The position numbers and the translations under genes are program-made. From the IMG/VR virus record IMGVR_UViG_3300043418_000114, positions 124,001 to 188,000 of that record: a DNA stretch of 64,000 nt; one strand, 5' to 3'. Shown one piece after another: positions 26,355 through 45,703 of this stretch. The notes under the pieces were generated by a model. It was not told the origin of the DNA. It saw only the letters and a program-made list of their open reading frames with translations, and searched no databases. The first letter of the stretch is position 1. Every line of letters starts with the position of its first letter.

Positions 26355-26745
26355 CACTCACAAGTACAAAATCACGGAAGCTGTTCGCAAGCAACTTCCT
26401 AGTGATGACACCCCCATAGAAATCATCATCAAGGATTGGTGGTTTACTAAATCCAGTGAGAATCTTAGATTAACTGCGTATGGAGACCAGGCACTTCGAC
26501 ACGCTGAGATAGAGTACTTTGATGTGCCGATAAACATAACACAGGACAGGTGGTACGCATTCATTGTTGATTGTGGTAAAAAATTAAAGTGCCCATTTTA
26601 CATTGGCACTAATAAGAAACACTCAAGATTAGACGGCACCACTGGTGGACCATTCATCAGACTCTATGACAGCAAGATTGCCATGATGCTGACTCTTTAC
26701 GGTGACATTTATGGCTACCTCGACTCAATTAAAGTAAGAAAATAG
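26344..26745 (+). CDS. Hypothetical protein
   Basis: 133 aa ORF in operon. Confidence 0.55.
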   Translation: MHPNTHKYKITEAVRKQLPSDDTPIEIIIKDWWFTKSSENLRLTAYGDQALRHAEIEYFDVPINITQDRWYAFIVDCGKKLKCPFYIGTNKKHSRLDGTTGGPFIRLYDSKIAMMLTLYGDIYGYLDSIKVRK

Positions 26746-26805
26746 TCAACTGAATCCGTGGTTGAAGCGTTAAATATATGTACTTGTTTTTATAAGGAGA
26801 TAACC

Positions 26806-26991
26806 ATGAAACAATTATTCGCAATCGTATTAGCACTATTCGCATTCTCAACATTTGCCGCTGAGCCAGCAGTTGCCCCAGCAGGTGCACCAAAGCAAGA
26901 AATGAAGTTGGCCAAGAAGAAAGATCACTCAAAGGACAAGAAGGTGGACGCCACCAAAAGTCCCCAGAAAAGTAAAGCTGTTAAGAAGTAA
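26806..26991 (+). CDS. Small exported Lys/Ala-rich protein
   Basis: Signal peptide MKQLFAIVLALFAFSTFA then a basic low-complexity tail; AGGAG RBS. Confidence 0.65.
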   Translation: MKQLFAIVLALFAFSTFAAEPAVAPAGAPKQEMKLAKKKDHSKDKKVDATKSPQKSKAVKK

Positions 26992-27263
26992 TCCACATCA
27001 TAAATCAGTTCTCGTTATCGACGATGAAGATGACGAGATTGATGACGATGGACTAGCTACATTCTATCGTAGACCTAGACTGGTGAAGTATAACCCAGAT
27101 GAAGATTTGGAAGATTTGCCAGAACACATCACGCTTAGGCTAGCAGAGATTAGAGAGAAAGCTCTACAAAAATATCGTGATCAATGCTATAATACAGCAT
27201 AAATAAAGTAGTTAGAGTTCTACTTAAAAACTCAACTTAAACACACTTACACAGGAGAAAATT

Positions 27264-27557
27264 ATGTTTAATACATTCGCATTTCAAGGCGTGGACGCCA
27301 TTCAATCAGCCAAGAAACAATTCGTTTCTACATTCGTTCAAAACGAACAAATCAAAGAAGCTCTTAACGGTTTCATTGATGCTCAAGCATCATACACCAA
27401 AGAAGCTATCACTGCAGGTTCTGTAGCTGTTACTAAGGTAACTGAAACCTTCACTGACCGCACTCCATACGTTGAAGCAACTAAGAAAGTTTCTGACTTC
27501 TTAGCTCCATTCTTCCCAACAGCGGCATGTGCTACTCCAGCTAAGAAGGCTAAGTAA
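27264..27557 (+). CDS. Phasin-like protein
   Basis: 97 aa amphipathic Ala-rich helices (VDAIQSAKKQFVSTFV...FIDAQASYTKEA); ATAAATA at 27199; assignment by recalled resemblance only. Confidence 0.45.
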   Translation: MFNTFAFQGVDAIQSAKKQFVSTFVQNEQIKEALNGFIDAQASYTKEAITAGSVAVTKVTETFTDRTPYVEATKKVSDFLAPFFPTAACATPAKKAK

Positions 27558-27559
27558 TC

Positions 27560-27751
27560 ATGTTATCAGTTCTACTATCATTTTTAGTGTTAGCAGTCAT
27601 GGGCAGTATCGTGCCTATGATTGGACTACTAAGTGAAGGTACATCATACGGTTCGAAGTTAGAAGAATACATCACAAGTCGTAATCCAAAAGACACTGCC
27701 GATGTAGAGCGTTATACACGTGATTTTGATTCAAAGAAGAATTTTCTATGA
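27560..27751 (+). CDS. Small membrane-anchored protein
   Basis: TM then YGSKLEEYITSRNPKDTADVE. Confidence 0.6.
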   Translation: MLSVLLSFLVLAVMGSIVPMIGLLSEGTSYGSKLEEYITSRNPKDTADVERYTRDFDSKKNFL

Positions 27752-27831
27752 AGAAGTTTTTCCTAGCATTAATCGAAGCCATACAACTAGCACGTGACGC
27801 CCAAGCAAAAAGAATCGTTCGCGGATCATGA
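27748..27831 (+). CDS. 27-aa peptide
   Basis: ATGA-coupled at both ends: MKKFFLALIEAIQLARDAQAKRIVRGS. Confidence 0.45.
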   Translation: MKKFFLALIEAIQLARDAQAKRIVRGS

Positions 27832-28403
27832 TGCAAATTCACCACACTAACATATACAAGATTAGTGATTATAGTCGTCACTTGAAGGCGCTAACACCTG
27901 AGGATAAAGTCTCACGTTTTGGTTACCCTGCAAATGACTTCTCTATCGATCAAATGATTTTGAGTATGTGCTACAATCCTAGCGACCATGAACTATGGTA
28001 CGCACGTGATGATGGCGATAGAGTGGGCTGGGGACATATGGCAAAGAATCGTGATGGTTCTTGGGAACTAGCAGTTTCTGTTAACAAAGACTATCAACGT
28101 CAGGGCATTGGTAATATGCTTATTACTGAAATGCTCAGATGGGCTAAGTTTCACAAAATCAGTGAGGTGTATATGCACTGCATTGAAGATAACAAAGTCA
28201 TTCAACACTTAGCATCAAAAAACGAACTACAAACTAGAAGTCGTGGCGACGGTGAACGTACTGCCGCGATTGAAGTCCCTGAACCATCGTTCTTGGAAGC
28301 TAACACACAACTCTGGAAAGAGCAAAAAGAAATTTTCAACGAATTCAGTAAACTACGCAATCGCTTAACTCAATTATGGGCATTGCCAATGTTACCGAAA
28401 TAA
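27828..28403 (+). CDS. GNAT family acetyltransferase
   Basis: ELAVSVNKDYQRQGIG acetyl-CoA motif A; HLKALTPEDKVSRFG N-terminus. Confidence 0.85.
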   Translation: MMQIHHTNIYKISDYSRHLKALTPEDKVSRFGYPANDFSIDQMILSMCYNPSDHELWYARDDGDRVGWGHMAKNRDGSWELAVSVNKDYQRQGIGNMLITEMLRWAKFHKISEVYMHCIEDNKVIQHLASKNELQTRSRGDGERTAAIEVPEPSFLEANTQLWKEQKEIFNEFSKLRNRLTQLWALPMLPK

Positions 28404-28460
28404 TTGCATTACACAATGCAGTACAATAAACTTAACACACATTAACACAGGAGACAGAAA

Positions 28461-28733
28461 ATGTCACAATTCGAAGCACCAAAATTACCACAAGTTAAAT
28501 TCAACAAAAACGGCTATGAGATTCGCGCCGACGTTCTAGCAATGGCTAAGGAAGTAGTCATGCAAGACTATCAAGTTAAGATGCATGGTTGGGAAATCAC
28601 TGCTGGTCGTGATGAACGTACCGGTCAACTTACAACTACAGTAGCAATGCCAGAGTTTCCGGGCATGGACAAGATTCTAGAAGCCGCAGAAAAGATGTAT
28701 GTCTTCGTCAATCAAGGTTCTACACAAAAGTAA
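28461..28733 (+). CDS. Hypothetical protein
   Basis: KNGYEIRADVLAMAK...ILEAAEKMYVFV; strong RBS. Confidence 0.7.
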   Translation: MSQFEAPKLPQVKFNKNGYEIRADVLAMAKEVVMQDYQVKMHGWEITAGRDERTGQLTTTVAMPEFPGMDKILEAAEKMYVFVNQGSTQK

Positions 28734-28751
28734 TACTTTCTTACTAACAAC

Positions 28752-28775
28752 ATAGGCCCTATAGGGGCCTATTTC
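28752..28775 (+). terminator. Rho-independent terminator
   Basis: ATAGGCCC-TATAG-GGGCCTAT followed by a T-rich run. Confidence 0.7.
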
Positions 28776-28782
28776 ATTTTGG

Positions 28783-28811
28783 TTGACACTAAATGGGTTT
28801 GGACATATAAT
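28783..28811 (+). promoter_or_regulatory. Consensus sigma70 early promoter
   Basis: TTGACA-CTAAATGGGTTTGGACA-TATAAT. Confidence 0.8.
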
Positions 28812-28817
28812 GCAATC

Positions 28818-30101
28818 ATGAAAAAACTTATTATTCTCCTGTCTATCGTTTTAACTGCATGTGGCGGAGGTGGTGGCGGATCAGCCAGTACTGCAACTGC
28901 TCCAGTTAACCCATGTGTGTTGAAAACGTATAACTCTCAGCCTCTTCCTGAGTATGCAGGTGCTCATTCACTTCCTGCTCCGTCGAATTTGAAATTTGAT
29001 GCGTCGGTGCAACGTGCAATTGGATTGAAAGACTATTACCCAGGCGGCGAAAACAACGGCTGTGCATCTAACAAAGACTATGCTCGTCTGTTGTATCAGA
29101 AGACATTGGATCGACTGCAAACACTGAACATTGATGTTGTTGAAATCTACCAGTACGGACCAGTTGATGATTTCAATGCAACAACGTGGACTGCGGATAA
29201 ATCTAAATGGCAAATTCCAGAGAGTGAATTGATTTGGTTTATCAAAGAAGCAAATAGCAGAAACATCAAAGTGAGTTTGATCTGGCAACTGTGGGGCGTT
29301 GATTCCAAAGGCAACACCATTGATACCAGCATGTCTACATCCGAAGCCTACATGTTGAAGGTTCTTCGTGGCTGGCACAACATCATTGTTGATATGGCAA
29401 AGTTAGGTGGTAGCAATGGTCTAAACATGTTGACCATTGAGTGGAATGCGTTCTACTTTCCTGTGATGACTAATTATCCGGTGAGTGCAACGACCGAATT
29501 CGTAGCTATCGTGGATGATATTCGTCAATACTTTAATGGCAAGTTGTTCATGCAAGCATCGCCAATCTTCTTTGATGGCCGATTGCTCAACAAAGTAGAT
29601 GCAGTCATTGTGCCGCTGAACCCAGCGAACTGGACGCACGTAGATGACACAAACATGTCTGTTGGTCTACTCAAGAGTAGGTATGCAGATGATATTTTTG
29701 GTAAAGCACTTGCACTGTCGATTGCAACTGGTGTGAATGCATCTAGTATTCCTGTGATCTGGGACTTGAACATTCAGAGTCGTGACCGAGCATTAAGCGA
29801 TGGCTGGGTAGAAGATGGATTCTGCATCACACAGGTTGGCAGTTCACCAACGACCTTTTCTAACCCATCATGTATGCAAAAAAACTATGTAACTGATTTT
29901 AGTGTGCAGGCAAATGCAGTCGAGGCAGTGTTCCAAGCTATCAAAGAGCAAACATATGTAAAGACGTACGGCATTATTTTCAGCACTAGTTACTGGCTCA
30001 CTGACACCATGACACCTGGCGAAGAAGGCTTTCCTAATTTGTCACAAAGCATTCGTGGCAAGCCAGCAGAAACTATCGTGAAGAATTGGTTTAGTAAATA
30101 A
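28818..30101 (+). CDS. Lipoprotein with glycoside-hydrolase-like TIM barrel (GH113/clan-A-like)
   Basis: Lipobox LTA-C plus Gly linker; alternating beta/alpha pattern; LTIEWN candidate catalytic Glu. Confidence 0.5.
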   Translation: MKKLIILLSIVLTACGGGGGGSASTATAPVNPCVLKTYNSQPLPEYAGAHSLPAPSNLKFDASVQRAIGLKDYYPGGENNGCASNKDYARLLYQKTLDRLQTLNIDVVEIYQYGPVDDFNATTWTADKSKWQIPESELIWFIKEANSRNIKVSLIWQLWGVDSKGNTIDTSMSTSEAYMLKVLRGWHNIIVDMAKLGGSNGLNMLTIEWNAFYFPVMTNYPVSATTEFVAIVDDIRQYFNGKLFMQASPIFFDGRLLNKVDAVIVPLNPANWTHVDDTNMSVGLLKSRYADDIFGKALALSIATGVNASSIPVIWDLNIQSRDRALSDGWVEDGFCITQVGSSPTTFSNPSCMQKNYVTDFSVQANAVEAVFQAIKEQTYVKTYGIIFSTSYWLTDTMTPGEEGFPNLSQSIRGKPAETIVKNWFSK

Positions 30102-44517: not shown

Positions 44518-44955
44518 ATGACAAAAACTTTATCCCTTCGTTCCCTCGACATTCCGTCAATCCACAAATTTGGTATCGGCTTCGATAACATGTTTGATGA
44601 ATTAATGCGAATGAATGCTCAACAATCCCTTAACTATCCTCCATACAACATTCTCAAGAATACCGATGATTCATTCGATATTCAAGTGGCTGTTTCTGGC
44701 TTTAGTGAAGGTGAGATTGAGGTCAATCTTGACAATCGAGTATTGACTATCAAGGGTCAGAAGGCGGAAGATGTAGTTGCTGAATATCTGCATAAAGGTA
44801 TCAGTACACGTGATTTCGTGCGTGAGTTCACTCTAGCCGAACACGTTGAGGTAATCAATGCCTCACAAAAAGATGGTATTTTGACTATTCAACTAGAACG
44901 CATCGTTCCAGAAGAAAAGAAACCGAAAAATATCCAGATATCTTATTCTAAATAA
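44518..44955 (+). CDS. hsp20: Small heat shock protein (Hsp20/IbpA-like)
   Basis: IGFDNMF, NYPPYNI, AVSGF, YLHKGIS.R.F, DGILTI.LER.VPEEKKP. Confidence 0.95.
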
Positions 44956-45623
44956 GAATTGCATTTTTCAAAATGCCATCGTCGCATTCCTGGGGTAGCT
45001 CCAGATTTGCCACAATGCGGACAGGTAATCATGATTGAATTAGGATTAACATTCTTTTGAAAATTATGATTACCTTCTCGAACTAGCTCACGCGCCCGTA
45101 CTGATTCTTGGTTATATGTTCGACCACTTGATCTGATTCCAATACTAATATTTTTTCGATGTTGATCCGTCTTGAATCCTTTATAATTATCTTTGTTGGA
45201 TTTAGGGCCTTGTAATTTTCGGATAAACTCTGGATTTTTAACTTTCGCTTGATTTGCTAATTTAATTTTATTTGCATGATCTACTGATTTTGGACCTCTG
45301 AGTTTTTCTCTCGTTTCCAATGAATGCTTATGGCCAGTAGTTCCCTCTCCACCATCGGTTTGATTTCTTAGTATACCTGTCATGTTGTCCTTGCGACCAT
45401 ACCATCTTATCATGCGTCTTTCCAACGCAAAAGCTCCAATTTCAGATAGTGATTGTTCCATGATGATAATTCTACATTCATCTACTGGCAAATTTATGCA
45501 ATGATTTTTGTGCCATGCCCTACCATTAAATCCCTTTCCGATATAGTACGGCGTACCATCGTCGCGCAAATATGCGTAAACATAGAACCCAATCGGTGGA
45601 TTCTTTTTTGAATAAATAGTCAT
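44943..45623 (-). mobile_element. Free-standing GIY-YIG-like homing endonuclease gene with NUMOD-type repeats
   Basis: [45 protein letters not shown]-terminal CPHCG; antisense insertion with its own late promoter. Confidence 0.8.
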
Positions 45624-45646
45624 GCTGATTGCTCCTTGAAAGCGTT

Positions 45647-45694
45647 AGAGTAGTCGGAGAGGTTAGAGACTCGCGGACTACACTTTTATTTATA
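45647..45694 (-). promoter_or_regulatory. Late promoter and leader hairpin of the endonuclease gene
   Basis: TATAAATA (45694-45687) then a GTAGTC...GACTAC stem upstream of an AGGAG RBS. Confidence 0.6.
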
Positions 45695-45703
45695 CCAAAC
45701 CAA

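What the first reader, a model, noticed from the sequence alone, without database searches (positions are those of the whole stretch)
27199..28775. Possible polyhydroxyalkanoate-granule module: phasin-like, small membrane protein, peptide, GNAT and a conserved hypothetical
Seen: a late promoter, five compact genes and a shared terminator. The first and last genes have similar AC-rich leaders (ACACAC..ACACAGGAGA), and a palindrome TGCATT-ACAC-AATGCA lies at 28405-28420. Recalled knowledge: phasins coat PHA granules, this GNAT subtype (HL..L...D...RFG) occurs near PHA genes in Burkholderiales, and PhaR operators are TGC/GCA-rich. Inference: the phage manipulates host carbon-storage granules late in infection. 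I know of no characterised phage system of this kind.
Basis: partly seen in the sequence, partly recalled or inferred. Interest (0 to 1): 0.7.

Follow-up and report, generated by a model that had tools for sequence, protein, structure and literature searches.

The report
Late phage operon with pseudoknot leader
This is a conserved, late-expressed cluster of small genes in an uncultivated freshwater giant phage; it is headed by a previously undescribed folded RNA leader, and the idea that it acts on the host's carbon-storage granules rests only on a weak resemblance.

Summary
There are five compact + strand genes: gA 97 aa, gB 63 aa, gC 27 aa, a GNAT of 191 aa and gE 90 aa. There are also two near-identical CA-rich leaders found nowhere else in the 364-kb genome, a palindrome, and a shared terminator.

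The PHA reading is mostly unsupported:
- gA itself matches no phasin model.
- Its wider, virus-only family gives recurrent sub-threshold phasin hits and phasin-like language-model neighbours. Profile-profile comparison is negative, and a reversed-sequence control points to amphipathic-helix composition.
- The phage has no PhaC, PhaZ or PhaR.
- The GNAT is a Pat/RimI-like protein acetyltransferase with no cellular relatives found. It is optional: 35 of 80 related loci have it, and elsewhere it is replaced by a lipase-like hydrolase or absent.
- The palindrome is a hairpin conserved in position but not in sequence, so it is not an operator.

New result: between a T4-type late-promoter motif (CATAAATA) and the CA-rich leader lies an H-type pseudoknot. 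It has strong covariation in both stems (95.7% paired, 8 of 11 pairs compensatory), occurs once per genome, always heads the module, and has no Rfam match.

Best reading: a late, strongly translated gA/gB/gE small-protein module under RNA-level control. Its protein function is unknown, probably at a hydrophobic surface.

The parts
26806..26991 (+). Upstream conserved neighbour: a signal-peptide, lysine-rich 61-aa protein. Possibly co-transcribed with the module.
   Evidence: Homologues lie upstream of the module in L001, L004, L008 and at least 16 of 80 IMG/VR loci. The metatranscriptome contig 26805-27234 is continuous with the gA contig at equal depth.
26954..27202 (+). Upstream conserved neighbour: an acidic protein ending ...LPEHITLRLAEIREKALQKYR.... 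The frame is open, but the window has no ATG/GTG/TTG before GTG 27083.
   Evidence: The homologue in L006 has its own ATG. The L006 homologue gives a sub-threshold DUF3619 hit.
27198..27205 (+). T4-type late-promoter-like motif CATAAATA.
   Evidence: Conserved before gA homologues in L001, L004, L031 and L032, and as CTAAATA in L006 and L008. Precedes the sheath and tube genes. Strand-specific 8.6x enrichment upstream of ORFs.
27206..27233 (+). H-type pseudoknot in the leader: S1 27206-27211 with 27220-27225; L1 UUA 27212-27214; S2 27215-27219 with 27229-27233; A-rich L3 27226-27228.
   Evidence: 28 distinct leaders aligned (A7). 95.7% of cells paired; 8 of 11 pairs have compensatory changes; covariation 0.532 against 0.149 in shuffles (0 of 500) and <=0.11 when slid. 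No Rfam match at E<=10. One copy per genome and per locus.
27234..27263 (+). CA-rich leader with no evident pairing partner in the pseudoknot, followed by a strong Shine-Dalgarno AGGAGA (27254-27259) for gA.
   Evidence: An ACAC...SD leader is present in 46 of 50 distinct gA upstream regions. ACACAGGAGA occurs only twice in the genome.
27264..27557 (+). gA: 97-aa, mostly helical, mildly basic protein with a conserved C-terminal KKAK tail. Virus-only family with a phasin-like profile.
   Evidence: AF2 pLDDT 75.8, main helices 2-24, 28-64 and 67-80. 153 close and 281 distant (50%-identity cluster) homologues. Phasin tests. pI 8.8, muH 0.32-0.43.
27560..27751 (+). gB: 63 aa, with an N-terminal TM helix and a conserved C-terminal motif (T)YGSxLExYIxSxNPxxxxDVERxTREF.
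   Evidence: 52 distinct homologues. The N-terminus is a TM helix in some and only amphipathic in others. gB follows gA even in the distant L032. No family match.
27748..27831 (+). gC: 27-aa cationic peptide (pI 11, muH 0.24).
   Evidence: Conserved in L006, fused to a TM helix in L008. HMM hits in about 25 of 80 loci. pI and muH.
27828..28403 (+). gD: GNAT acetyltransferase, Pat/RimI-like, with the acetyl-CoA motif RQGIG. It occupies an optional accessory slot.
   Evidence: Pfam 2.4e-12. NCBIfam RimI 1.5e-8 and mycobacterial Pat 1.1e-6. PDB 3f8k Sulfolobus Pat and RimI 9mto. Present in 35 of 80 loci; the slot is otherwise empty or holds a lipase-like hydrolase with or without a cupin.
28403..28422 (+). 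gE leader hairpin (8-bp stem, ACAC loop).
   Evidence: MFE z -3.06 in the window. Mean z -2.39 over 65 distinct gE leaders, with unrelated stem sequences.
28423..28460 (+). gE CA-rich leader and Shine-Dalgarno AGGAGA.
   Evidence: An ACAC...SD leader is present in 57 of 65 distinct gE upstream regions.
28461..28733 (+). gE: 90-aa protein, the most widespread member of the module.
   Evidence: 2709 homologues, none in isolated phages. AF2 pLDDT 52.7. Pfam G1RFP hits cover only 13 residues.
28752..28782 (+). Intrinsic terminator closing the module.
   Evidence: A GC-rich hairpin plus T run sits at the same place in L001, L004 and L006.
28783..28811 (+). Perfect sigma-70 promoter (TTGACA-17-TATAAT) of the next gene, a lipoprotein. 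It marks the 3' boundary of the module.
   Evidence: The same arrangement is seen in L001 and L006.

Best explanation
The region is a conserved late-gene module of an uncultivated clade of freshwater jumbo myoviruses, distant T4-superfamily relatives.

Shown:
- A T4-type late-promoter motif is followed by a covarying H-type pseudoknot, a CA-rich leader with no evident pairing partner and a strong ribosome-binding site.
- gE has a second leader of the same design, but with a plain hairpin.
- One terminator closes the unit.
- The conserved core is gA, gB and gE. Their order varies between relatives, while the GNAT sits in a swappable accessory slot.

Inferred:
- The pseudoknot plus the CA-rich leader acts at the RNA level, as a 5' stabiliser or a translational operator. 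This resembles the pseudoknot-plus-unstructured-leader operator of T4 gene 32 mRNA. It sets high, timed output of gA.
- gA is an abundant amphipathic helical protein that coats or bridges a hydrophobic surface, either the membrane (through gB and gC) or a host inclusion.
- The GNAT is an accessory protein N-acetyltransferase that modifies a host or phage protein. It is not part of the core mechanism.
For: Synteny and core:
- gA-gB-GNAT-gE is kept on contigs of 353-361 kb.
- Among 80 IMG/VR loci, gA is in 55, gB in 63 and the GNAT in 35. Orders include gA-gB-gC-GNAT-gE, gA-gB-gC-gE, gB-GNAT-gA-gE and gB-gA-gE.
- The gA-gB pair persists in the distant L032.

Late promoter.

Pseudoknot:
- Covariation.
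- Unique in the genome.
- It heads the module even where gB comes first, as in L074.
- No Rfam family.

gE hairpin: structure is kept without sequence.

Expression: 100%-identical contigs in a freshwater metatranscriptome cover 26805-28581 at word depth 16-35, against 0-9 in the flanks.

gA: helical model, amphipathic helices, phasin-type profile and embedding neighbours.

GNAT: Pat/RimI-like.

Phage type: sheath about 45% identical to Atu_ph07, PA5oct and Phosso.
Against: - No transcription start site is known. With T4 spacing (start 6-7 nt after the motif), a late transcript would begin inside the 5' arm of S1 and could not form the pseudoknot. Either the start lies upstream or the AUAAAUA motif is part of the RNA.
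- The pseudoknot does not touch the ribosome-binding site, so no switching mechanism is visible.
- No protein function is demonstrated. gB's TM helix is not conserved across relatives, which weakens a membrane role.
- The gA+gE complex prediction gave no answer, and gE did not fold confidently.
- The RNA library could contain DNA.
Confidence: 0.45

Rival explanations
1. One reading: gA is a phage phasin that coats host PHA granules late in infection, with the GNAT and the palindrome tied to PHA regulation.
For: - Phasin_2 is the only recurrent Pfam family across gA relatives (20 of 86, with a consistent register).
- Three NCBIfam phasin models appear among the hits, and TIGR01841 and TIGR01985 are the two most recurrent families.
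- 71 of the 100 nearest named ESM clusters are Phasin_2, 3 are PHB_acc and 1 is PhaE.
- The alternative enzyme in the accessory slot is lipase-like.
Against: - All hits are below threshold, and gA itself has none.
- hhalign against PhaP gives 0.9% probability.
- Reversed sequences score as well as real ones against a PhaP HMM.
- Because the 86 members are related to each other, the shared alignment register is not independent evidence.
- There is no PhaC, PhaZ or PhaR in the phage.
- There are no cellular relatives of gA or the GNAT.
- The palindrome's sequence is not conserved.
- The host is unknown.
Confidence: 0.13
2. gA and gE are abundant virion or morphogenesis proteins (a scaffold-like, decoration or internal head protein). 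gB and gC assist assembly at the membrane.
For: - Late promoter and very strong translation signals.
- Small helical-hairpin proteins of about 100 aa are known as phage scaffolds (own knowledge: phi29 gp7).
- gA and gE are highly conserved (60-93% and 70-100% identity among the listed close homologues).
Against: - The module lies among replication genes (helicase, exonuclease, ligase), far from the sheath and tube genes.
- No structural match and no PHROG.
- No virion proteome exists for this clade.
Confidence: 0.15
3. The module is a lysis-timing, membrane-integrity or superinfection-exclusion cassette, with gB as a membrane protein, gC as a cationic peptide and gA as a cytoplasmic regulator.
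For: - Late expression.
- A TM helix in gB and a cationic peptide gC.
- T4-type phages scatter small late membrane genes such as t, rI, rIII and sp (own knowledge).
Against: - gB's TM helix is replaced by a non-TM amphipathic helix in many relatives.
- No endolysin is adjacent.
- gC is missing from many loci.
Confidence: 0.12
4. The GNAT is the functional centre, and gA and/or gE are its lysine-tailed substrates or partners. The model would be a phage protein-acetylation switch or a GNAT toxin with its antidote.
For: - Pat/RimI-like protein acetyltransferase.
- gA and gE end in conserved lysines.
Against: - The GNAT is absent from 45 of 80 modules and is replaced by an unrelated hydrolase in 14.
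- No DUF1778/RHH antitoxin is present.
- gA keeps its lysine tail in loci that lack the GNAT.
Confidence: 0.08

Closest known systems
Translational operator of T4 gene 32 mRNA (5' H-type pseudoknot followed by an unstructured leader)
   Same: An H-type pseudoknot lies about 30-60 nt upstream of the start codon. It is followed by a leader with no evident pairing partner that carries the ribosome-binding site. The phage belongs to the T4 superfamily and the gene is highly expressed.
   Different: There is no sequence similarity. The downstream gene is a 97-aa helical protein, not an OB-fold ssDNA-binding protein. The leader is CA-rich rather than AU-rich. No binding protein is known.
preQ1-I riboswitch (Rfam RF00522) and other compact triplex pseudoknots
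   Same: Size (about 28 nt), short L1 beginning UU, an A-rich L3, a short S2 formed with the 3' tail, and invariant loop nucleotides.
   Different: No Rfam match at E<=10. There is no unpaired ligand-binding C between S2 and S1. The Shine-Dalgarno sequence is not part of S2. No queuosine gene lies downstream.
Phasin_2 / TIGR01841 phasins (PhaP)
   Same: Small, amphipathic, all-helical protein with recurrent sub-threshold profile matches and language-model neighbours.
   Different: Below every curated cut-off. There is no profile-profile signal. The similarity does not depend on residue order in the control. The family is virus-only, and there is no PHA gene context.
Pat / RimI-type GNAT protein acetyltransferases (Sulfolobus Pat 3f8k, RimI 9mto, mycobacterial Pat)
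   Same: GNAT core with the R/Q-x-x-G-x-G acetyl-CoA motif. The best sequence matches are protein N-acetyltransferases.
   Different: All matches are far below the equivalog cut-offs. It has its own N-terminal HLKxL...D..SRFG segment and a C-terminal helix. It has no regulatory domain. It is restricted to this phage lineage.
T4 late promoters (TATAAATA)
   Same: An A/T octamer with the core ATAAATA. It is strand-specific, lies upstream of structural genes, and has no -35 element.
   Different: The first base is usually G or C (GATAAATA, CATAAATA). The spacing to the transcript start is unknown. In this module a structured RNA abuts it.

Membership tests
Phasin_2 (PF09361) / TIGR01841 phasin | Scores at or above the curated family cut-off | tested here: not met
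   gA has no hit at E<=1 in Pfam or E<=10 in NCBIfam. The best family member reaches 22.3 bits against a cut-off of 24.9.
Phasin_2 (PF09361) / TIGR01841 phasin | Order-specific sequence homology to bona fide phasins | tested here: not met
   hhalign of A2 against A4 gives 0.9% probability. A PhaP HMM scores real and reversed gA sequences alike (max 8.1 and 11.5 bits), and both score above shuffles. The control used only ten Burkholderiales PhaPs.
Phasin_2 (PF09361) / TIGR01841 phasin | Binds PHA granules; encoded with or regulated alongside PHA genes | not testable with these tools
   Binding needs an experiment. For context, there is no PhaC, PhaZ or PhaR in the phage, and the host is unknown.
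PhaR operator | Conserved TGC/GCA-rich operator sequence at the regulated promoter | tested here: not met
   A hairpin is kept at the same position, but with unrelated sequences in L001, L004, L006, L008 and 65 distinct leaders. No PhaR is encoded.
GNAT superfamily | Acetyltransf_1 domain with the acetyl-CoA-binding motif | tested here: met
   PF00583 47.6 bits against a cut-off of 20.7. R91, G93 and the surrounding motif are invariant in 17 homologues.
Pat-type protein lysine acetyltransferase | Equivalog-level match; acetylates lysines of target proteins | tested here: inconclusive
   Mycobacterial Pat 27.7 bits against a cut-off of 460. RimI 34.8 bits against 86.4. 3f8k at E 7e-4. The substrate was not tested.
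   No relative in 185,579 species genomes by pattern plus tblastn. All 120 listed homologues belong to the phage lineage. The search method is limited to two peptide patterns.
Any Rfam family (including preQ1-I RF00522) | Covariance-model match | tested here: not met
   No match to the leader at E<=10 over 27100-28500.
H-type RNA pseudoknot | Two crossing helices, each supported by compensatory changes | tested here: met
   Helix 1: 4 of 6 pairs compensatory, 93.1% paired. Helix 2: 4 of 5 compensatory, 98.6% paired. Shuffled and slid controls are far lower.
T4-type late promoter | TATAAATA-like octamer upstream of late (structural) genes, strand-specific | tested here: met
   Transcription from it was not tested. 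gp55/gp33 homologues were not searched for.
Intrinsic terminator | GC-rich hairpin followed by a T run | tested here: met

The most novel reading that the evidence does not exclude
The pseudoknot is a new class of phage cis-regulatory RNA. It could be a ligand-sensing riboswitch of the compact triplex type, or an operator bound by gA itself. It would gate late mass production of a virus-specific phasin analogue that coats host storage granules or membranes in abundant freshwater jumbo phages.
Probability: 0.2. Interest if true: 0.75.

Novelty: new variant of a known kind. Interest (0 to 1): 0.55.

Why it matters
- The module belongs to a large, so far uncultivated clade of freshwater jumbo phages. 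There are hundreds to thousands of homologues in metagenomes and none in isolated phages.
- It appears to be transcribed in a lake metatranscriptome.
- It provides a small, well-supported structured RNA that is absent from Rfam and is directly testable with reporters and in-line probing.
- It defines three virus-only protein families (gA, gB, gE) that travel together.
- If gA does bind PHA granules, it would be the first phage phasin and a new way for viruses to exploit host carbon stores. If it does not, the case is a useful warning that amphipathic helical proteins attract phasin-like hits from both HMMs and language models.

Tried and rejected
**Searches that found nothing**
- Near-identity and tblastn searches of isolated phages for the region, gA, gE and the GNAT: no match.
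- Foldseek of the gA model against AFDB clusters and PDB: only non-specific helical hairpins, E>1.
- PDB profile searches for gA, gE and gB: nothing significant.
- tblastn of the best phasin-hitting family member (P0385) against plasmids: one E=1 hit in a Rhizobium chromid that has no Phasin_2 at all.
- Literature searches for phage phasins: nothing relevant.
- A search for a 'gene 1 ring' protein: nothing.

**Leads rejected**
- gE and Pfam G1RFP: 30 of 36 members hit, but only over 13 residues of near-identical sequences, so the match is rejected.
- gB and Tsi2-like immunity proteins: weak, at E 0.01-0.5.

**Attempts that gave no answer or could not run**
- The gE structure prediction had pLDDT 52.7, so it was not searched.
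- The gA+gE complex prediction gave no answer.
Host inference and a GNAT neighbourhood survey in Burkholderiales could therefore not be done.
- A reversed-sequence control against the Pfam Phasin_2 model itself was not run, because it would need typed artificial sequences.
Full report
**Context**

The window is bases 124001-188000 of a 364,247-bp virus record at 41% GC. It has direct terminal repeats and is rated complete, so this is an uncultivated jumbo phage. Its tail sheath is about 45% identical to those of Agrobacterium phage Atu_ph07, Pseudomonas phage PA5oct and Sinorhizobium phage Phosso. It is therefore a distant T4-superfamily myovirus. The region is found only in freshwater metagenomes. 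The host is unknown.

**Observation**

- gA 27264-27557 (97 aa)
- gB 27560-27751 (63 aa, N-terminal TM helix)
- gC 27748-27831 (27 aa)
- a GNAT 27828-28403 (191 aa; Acetyltransf_1 2.4e-12)
- gE 28461-28733 (90 aa)

An intrinsic terminator follows at 28752-28772. After it comes a perfect TTGACA-17-TATAAT promoter for the next gene.

The decamer ACACAGGAGA occurs only twice in the whole genome, before gA and before gE. The palindrome is part of an 8-bp hairpin at 28403-28422.

The 'late promoter' is CATAAATA at 27198-27205:
- The motif is conserved upstream of gA homologues, including distant ones.
- It also precedes the tail sheath and tail tube genes.
- ATAAATA is 8.6-fold enriched in sense-strand upstream windows. 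Its reverse complement is enriched 1.7-fold and same-composition permutations 1.9-3.0-fold.

**Conservation**

- gA has 153 close homologues at 60-93% identity and 281 clusters at 50% identity. All are viral or metagenomic.
- The GNAT has 365 homologues.
- gE has 2709 homologues.
- None of the three has a match in about 50,000 isolated phage genomes.
- Neither gA nor the GNAT was found in 185,579 species genomes.

On contigs of 353-361 kb the order gA-gB-GNAT-gE is kept, between replication genes: DEAD helicase, 5'-3' exonuclease and DNA ligase.

In 80 IMG/VR loci anchored on gE, gA is detected in 55, gB in 63 and the GNAT in 35. The gene orders are:
- gA-gB-gC-GNAT-gE
- gA-gB-gC-gE
- gB-GNAT-gA-gE
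- gB-gA-gE
- gB-GNAT-gE

In 14 loci the slot holds a small lipase-like alpha/beta hydrolase with an AHSLGG nucleophile elbow. Its best PDB matches are Burkholderia and Pseudomonas lipases at E about 5e-4. In L006 and L007 a Cupin_2 protein immediately precedes it.

The core is therefore gA, gB and gE, and the enzyme is an interchangeable accessory. The gA-gB pair persists even in the distant locus L032, where gB has no TM helix. Across relatives gB's N-terminus is either a TM helix or only amphipathic. Its C-terminal motif YGSxLExYIxSxNPxxxxDVERxTREF is what stays conserved.

**The phasin question**

gA itself matches no phasin model: none in Pfam at E<=1 or NCBIfam at E<=10, and no PHROGs family at E<=0.01.

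Evidence for a phasin resemblance, at the level of the family:
- When 86 diverse family members were scanned one by one, Phasin_2 was hit by 20 at E<=0.1. The best score was 22.3 bits against a cut-off of 24.9, and the alignment register was consistent. No other family was hit by more than 3 members.
- In NCBIfam the top recurrent models were again phasins: TIGR01841 in 8 members, TIGR01985 in 3 and phaP_Bmeg in 1.
- In the ESM Atlas, 71 of the 100 nearest named clusters are Phasin_2, 3 are PHB_acc and 1 is PHA_synth_III_E. The best score is 0.85 with 131 shared features, which the tool rates as a lead only.

Evidence against homology:
- I fetched ten annotated phasins from Burkholderiales plasmids. 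hhalign of the gA family against them gives 0.9% probability.
- An HMM of those phasins scores real gA-family sequences no better than the same sequences reversed. Both score above shuffles.
- Foldseek gives only generic helical hairpins.
- The phage genome encodes no PHB depolymerase, PHA synthase or PhaR.

My reading is that gA shares the composition and helical periodicity of granule-binding amphipathic proteins. That is compatible with binding a hydrophobic surface, but homology and a PHA function are not shown. One caveat applies: my reversal control used a narrow phasin set, not the Pfam model that gave the strongest hits.

**The GNAT**

Its best matches are protein N-acetyltransferases:
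- RimI 1.5e-8 and mycobacterial Pat 1.1e-6 in NCBIfam.
- Sulfolobus Pat 3f8k and RimI 9mto in the PDB.

The acetyl-CoA motif is invariant. I could not reproduce the recalled link to PHA genes.

**The palindrome**

A hairpin sits at the same place before gE in every relative, but with unrelated stem sequences. Over 65 distinct gE leaders the mean MFE z-score is -2.39, and it is -3.06 in the window. Structure without sequence points to an RNA element, not a protein operator.

**The new finding: a pseudoknot in the gA leader**

Directly after the late-promoter motif the gA leader folds into an H-type pseudoknot:
- S1: 27206-27211 with 27220-27225
- L1 (UUA): 27212-27214
- S2: 27215-27219 with 27229-27233
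- L3 (A-rich): 27226-27228

About 30 nt of CA-rich sequence then follow, ending in the Shine-Dalgarno sequence.

On 28 distinct leaders:
- 95.7% of cells form standard pairs.
- 8 of 11 pairs show compensatory double changes. For example, one S1 pair is CG in 10 leaders, UA in 8, AU in 5 and GC in 5. One S2 pair is AU in 16, GC in 7, CG in 2 and UA in 1.
- The covariation score is 0.532. Shuffles give 0.149 (0 of 500 reach the observed value), and sliding the partners gives at most 0.11.
- The loop uridines, the L3 adenines and the two closing S1 pairs are invariant.

No Rfam family matches. A covariance model finds the element once per locus in 33 loci, and always at the head of the module. 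That includes L074, where gB is the first gene. It finds the element exactly once in the whole 364-kb genome.

**Expression**

A freshwater metatranscriptome holds 100%-identical contigs covering 26805-28581:
- Word depth is about 34 over the upstream neighbours and gA-gC.
- It is about 16 over the GNAT and the start of gE.
- It is 0 just upstream (26416-26804) and 2-9 over the downstream gene.

The unevenness argues for RNA rather than contaminating DNA. However, contigs cannot locate transcript ends.

**Mechanism**

Shown: the promoter motif, the pseudoknot, the leaders, the hairpin, the terminator, the core and accessory gene pattern, the GNAT fold and the helical gA model.

Inferred: the pseudoknot plus the CA-rich leader acts as a 5' stabiliser or a translational operator, by analogy with the T4 gene 32 operator. 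gA is made in large amounts late in infection and acts at a hydrophobic surface together with gB and gC. The GNAT acetylates a protein.

Unresolved: with T4-like spacing, a late transcript would start inside S1. Either the start lies further upstream, or the pseudoknot exists only on read-through RNA from the two conserved upstream genes.

**Verdict**

The PHA interpretation is only weakly supported, and I give it about 0.13. The region is better described as a conserved late small-protein module under RNA-level control, and it contains a structured RNA that has not been described before.

Noticed in passing
window 26954-27202 (+): The conserved acidic protein upstream of gA has an open frame that matches the N-terminus of its L006 homologue. 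In the window there is no ATG/GTG/TTG before GTG 27083. The frame overlaps the 3' end of the lysine-rich gene in the +1 frame. Possible explanations are a non-canonical start, a frameshift or a decaying gene.
   Followed up: partly
window 45624-45700 (- strand, upstream of ORF 44943-45623); also genome 104055 and 10756 (- strand): Three genes (226, 220 and 180 aa) share a paralogous leader: ATAAATAA, then a long GC-containing hairpin, then CTCTAA(C/T)GCTT and the SD. This looks like a second family of structured late leaders.
   Followed up: no
L006 3948-4951; L052 3266-3913 and 12 further loci: In related phages the GNAT slot holds a 194-aa lipase-like serine hydrolase (AHSLGG). In L006 and L007 a Cupin_2 protein immediately precedes it. 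An acyl-transfer enzyme and an ester hydrolase therefore alternate at the same position.
   Followed up: partly
window 26806-26991 (+); L001 5533-5727; L004 5487-5744; L031 1816-2115: Lysine/alanine/proline-rich proteins recur next to gA homologues. In this clade they carry a signal peptide. In L031 the protein is a histone-H1-like AKP repeat protein.
   Followed up: no
window 28783-28811 (+) and 28818-30101: A perfect sigma-70 consensus promoter lies directly after the module's terminator. It drives a 427-aa lipoprotein (lipobox LTAC followed by a glycine run). The gene is variable between relatives, which have FG-GAP or PstS-like genes at this position.
   Followed up: no
window 27249-27272 joined to 28647-28694 (run X18): A metatranscriptome contig from a related phage joins the gA leader to the 3' part of gE with only 379 nt between them. 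This is consistent with the gB-gA-gE type of module also being transcribed.
   Followed up: no
window 27207-27234: The two metatranscriptome contigs that cover the gA leader overlap exactly over the pseudoknot core (27207-27234). The likely cause is co-occurring strains that share the core but differ in the flanks. An RNA 5' end at 27207 cannot be excluded.
   Followed up: no
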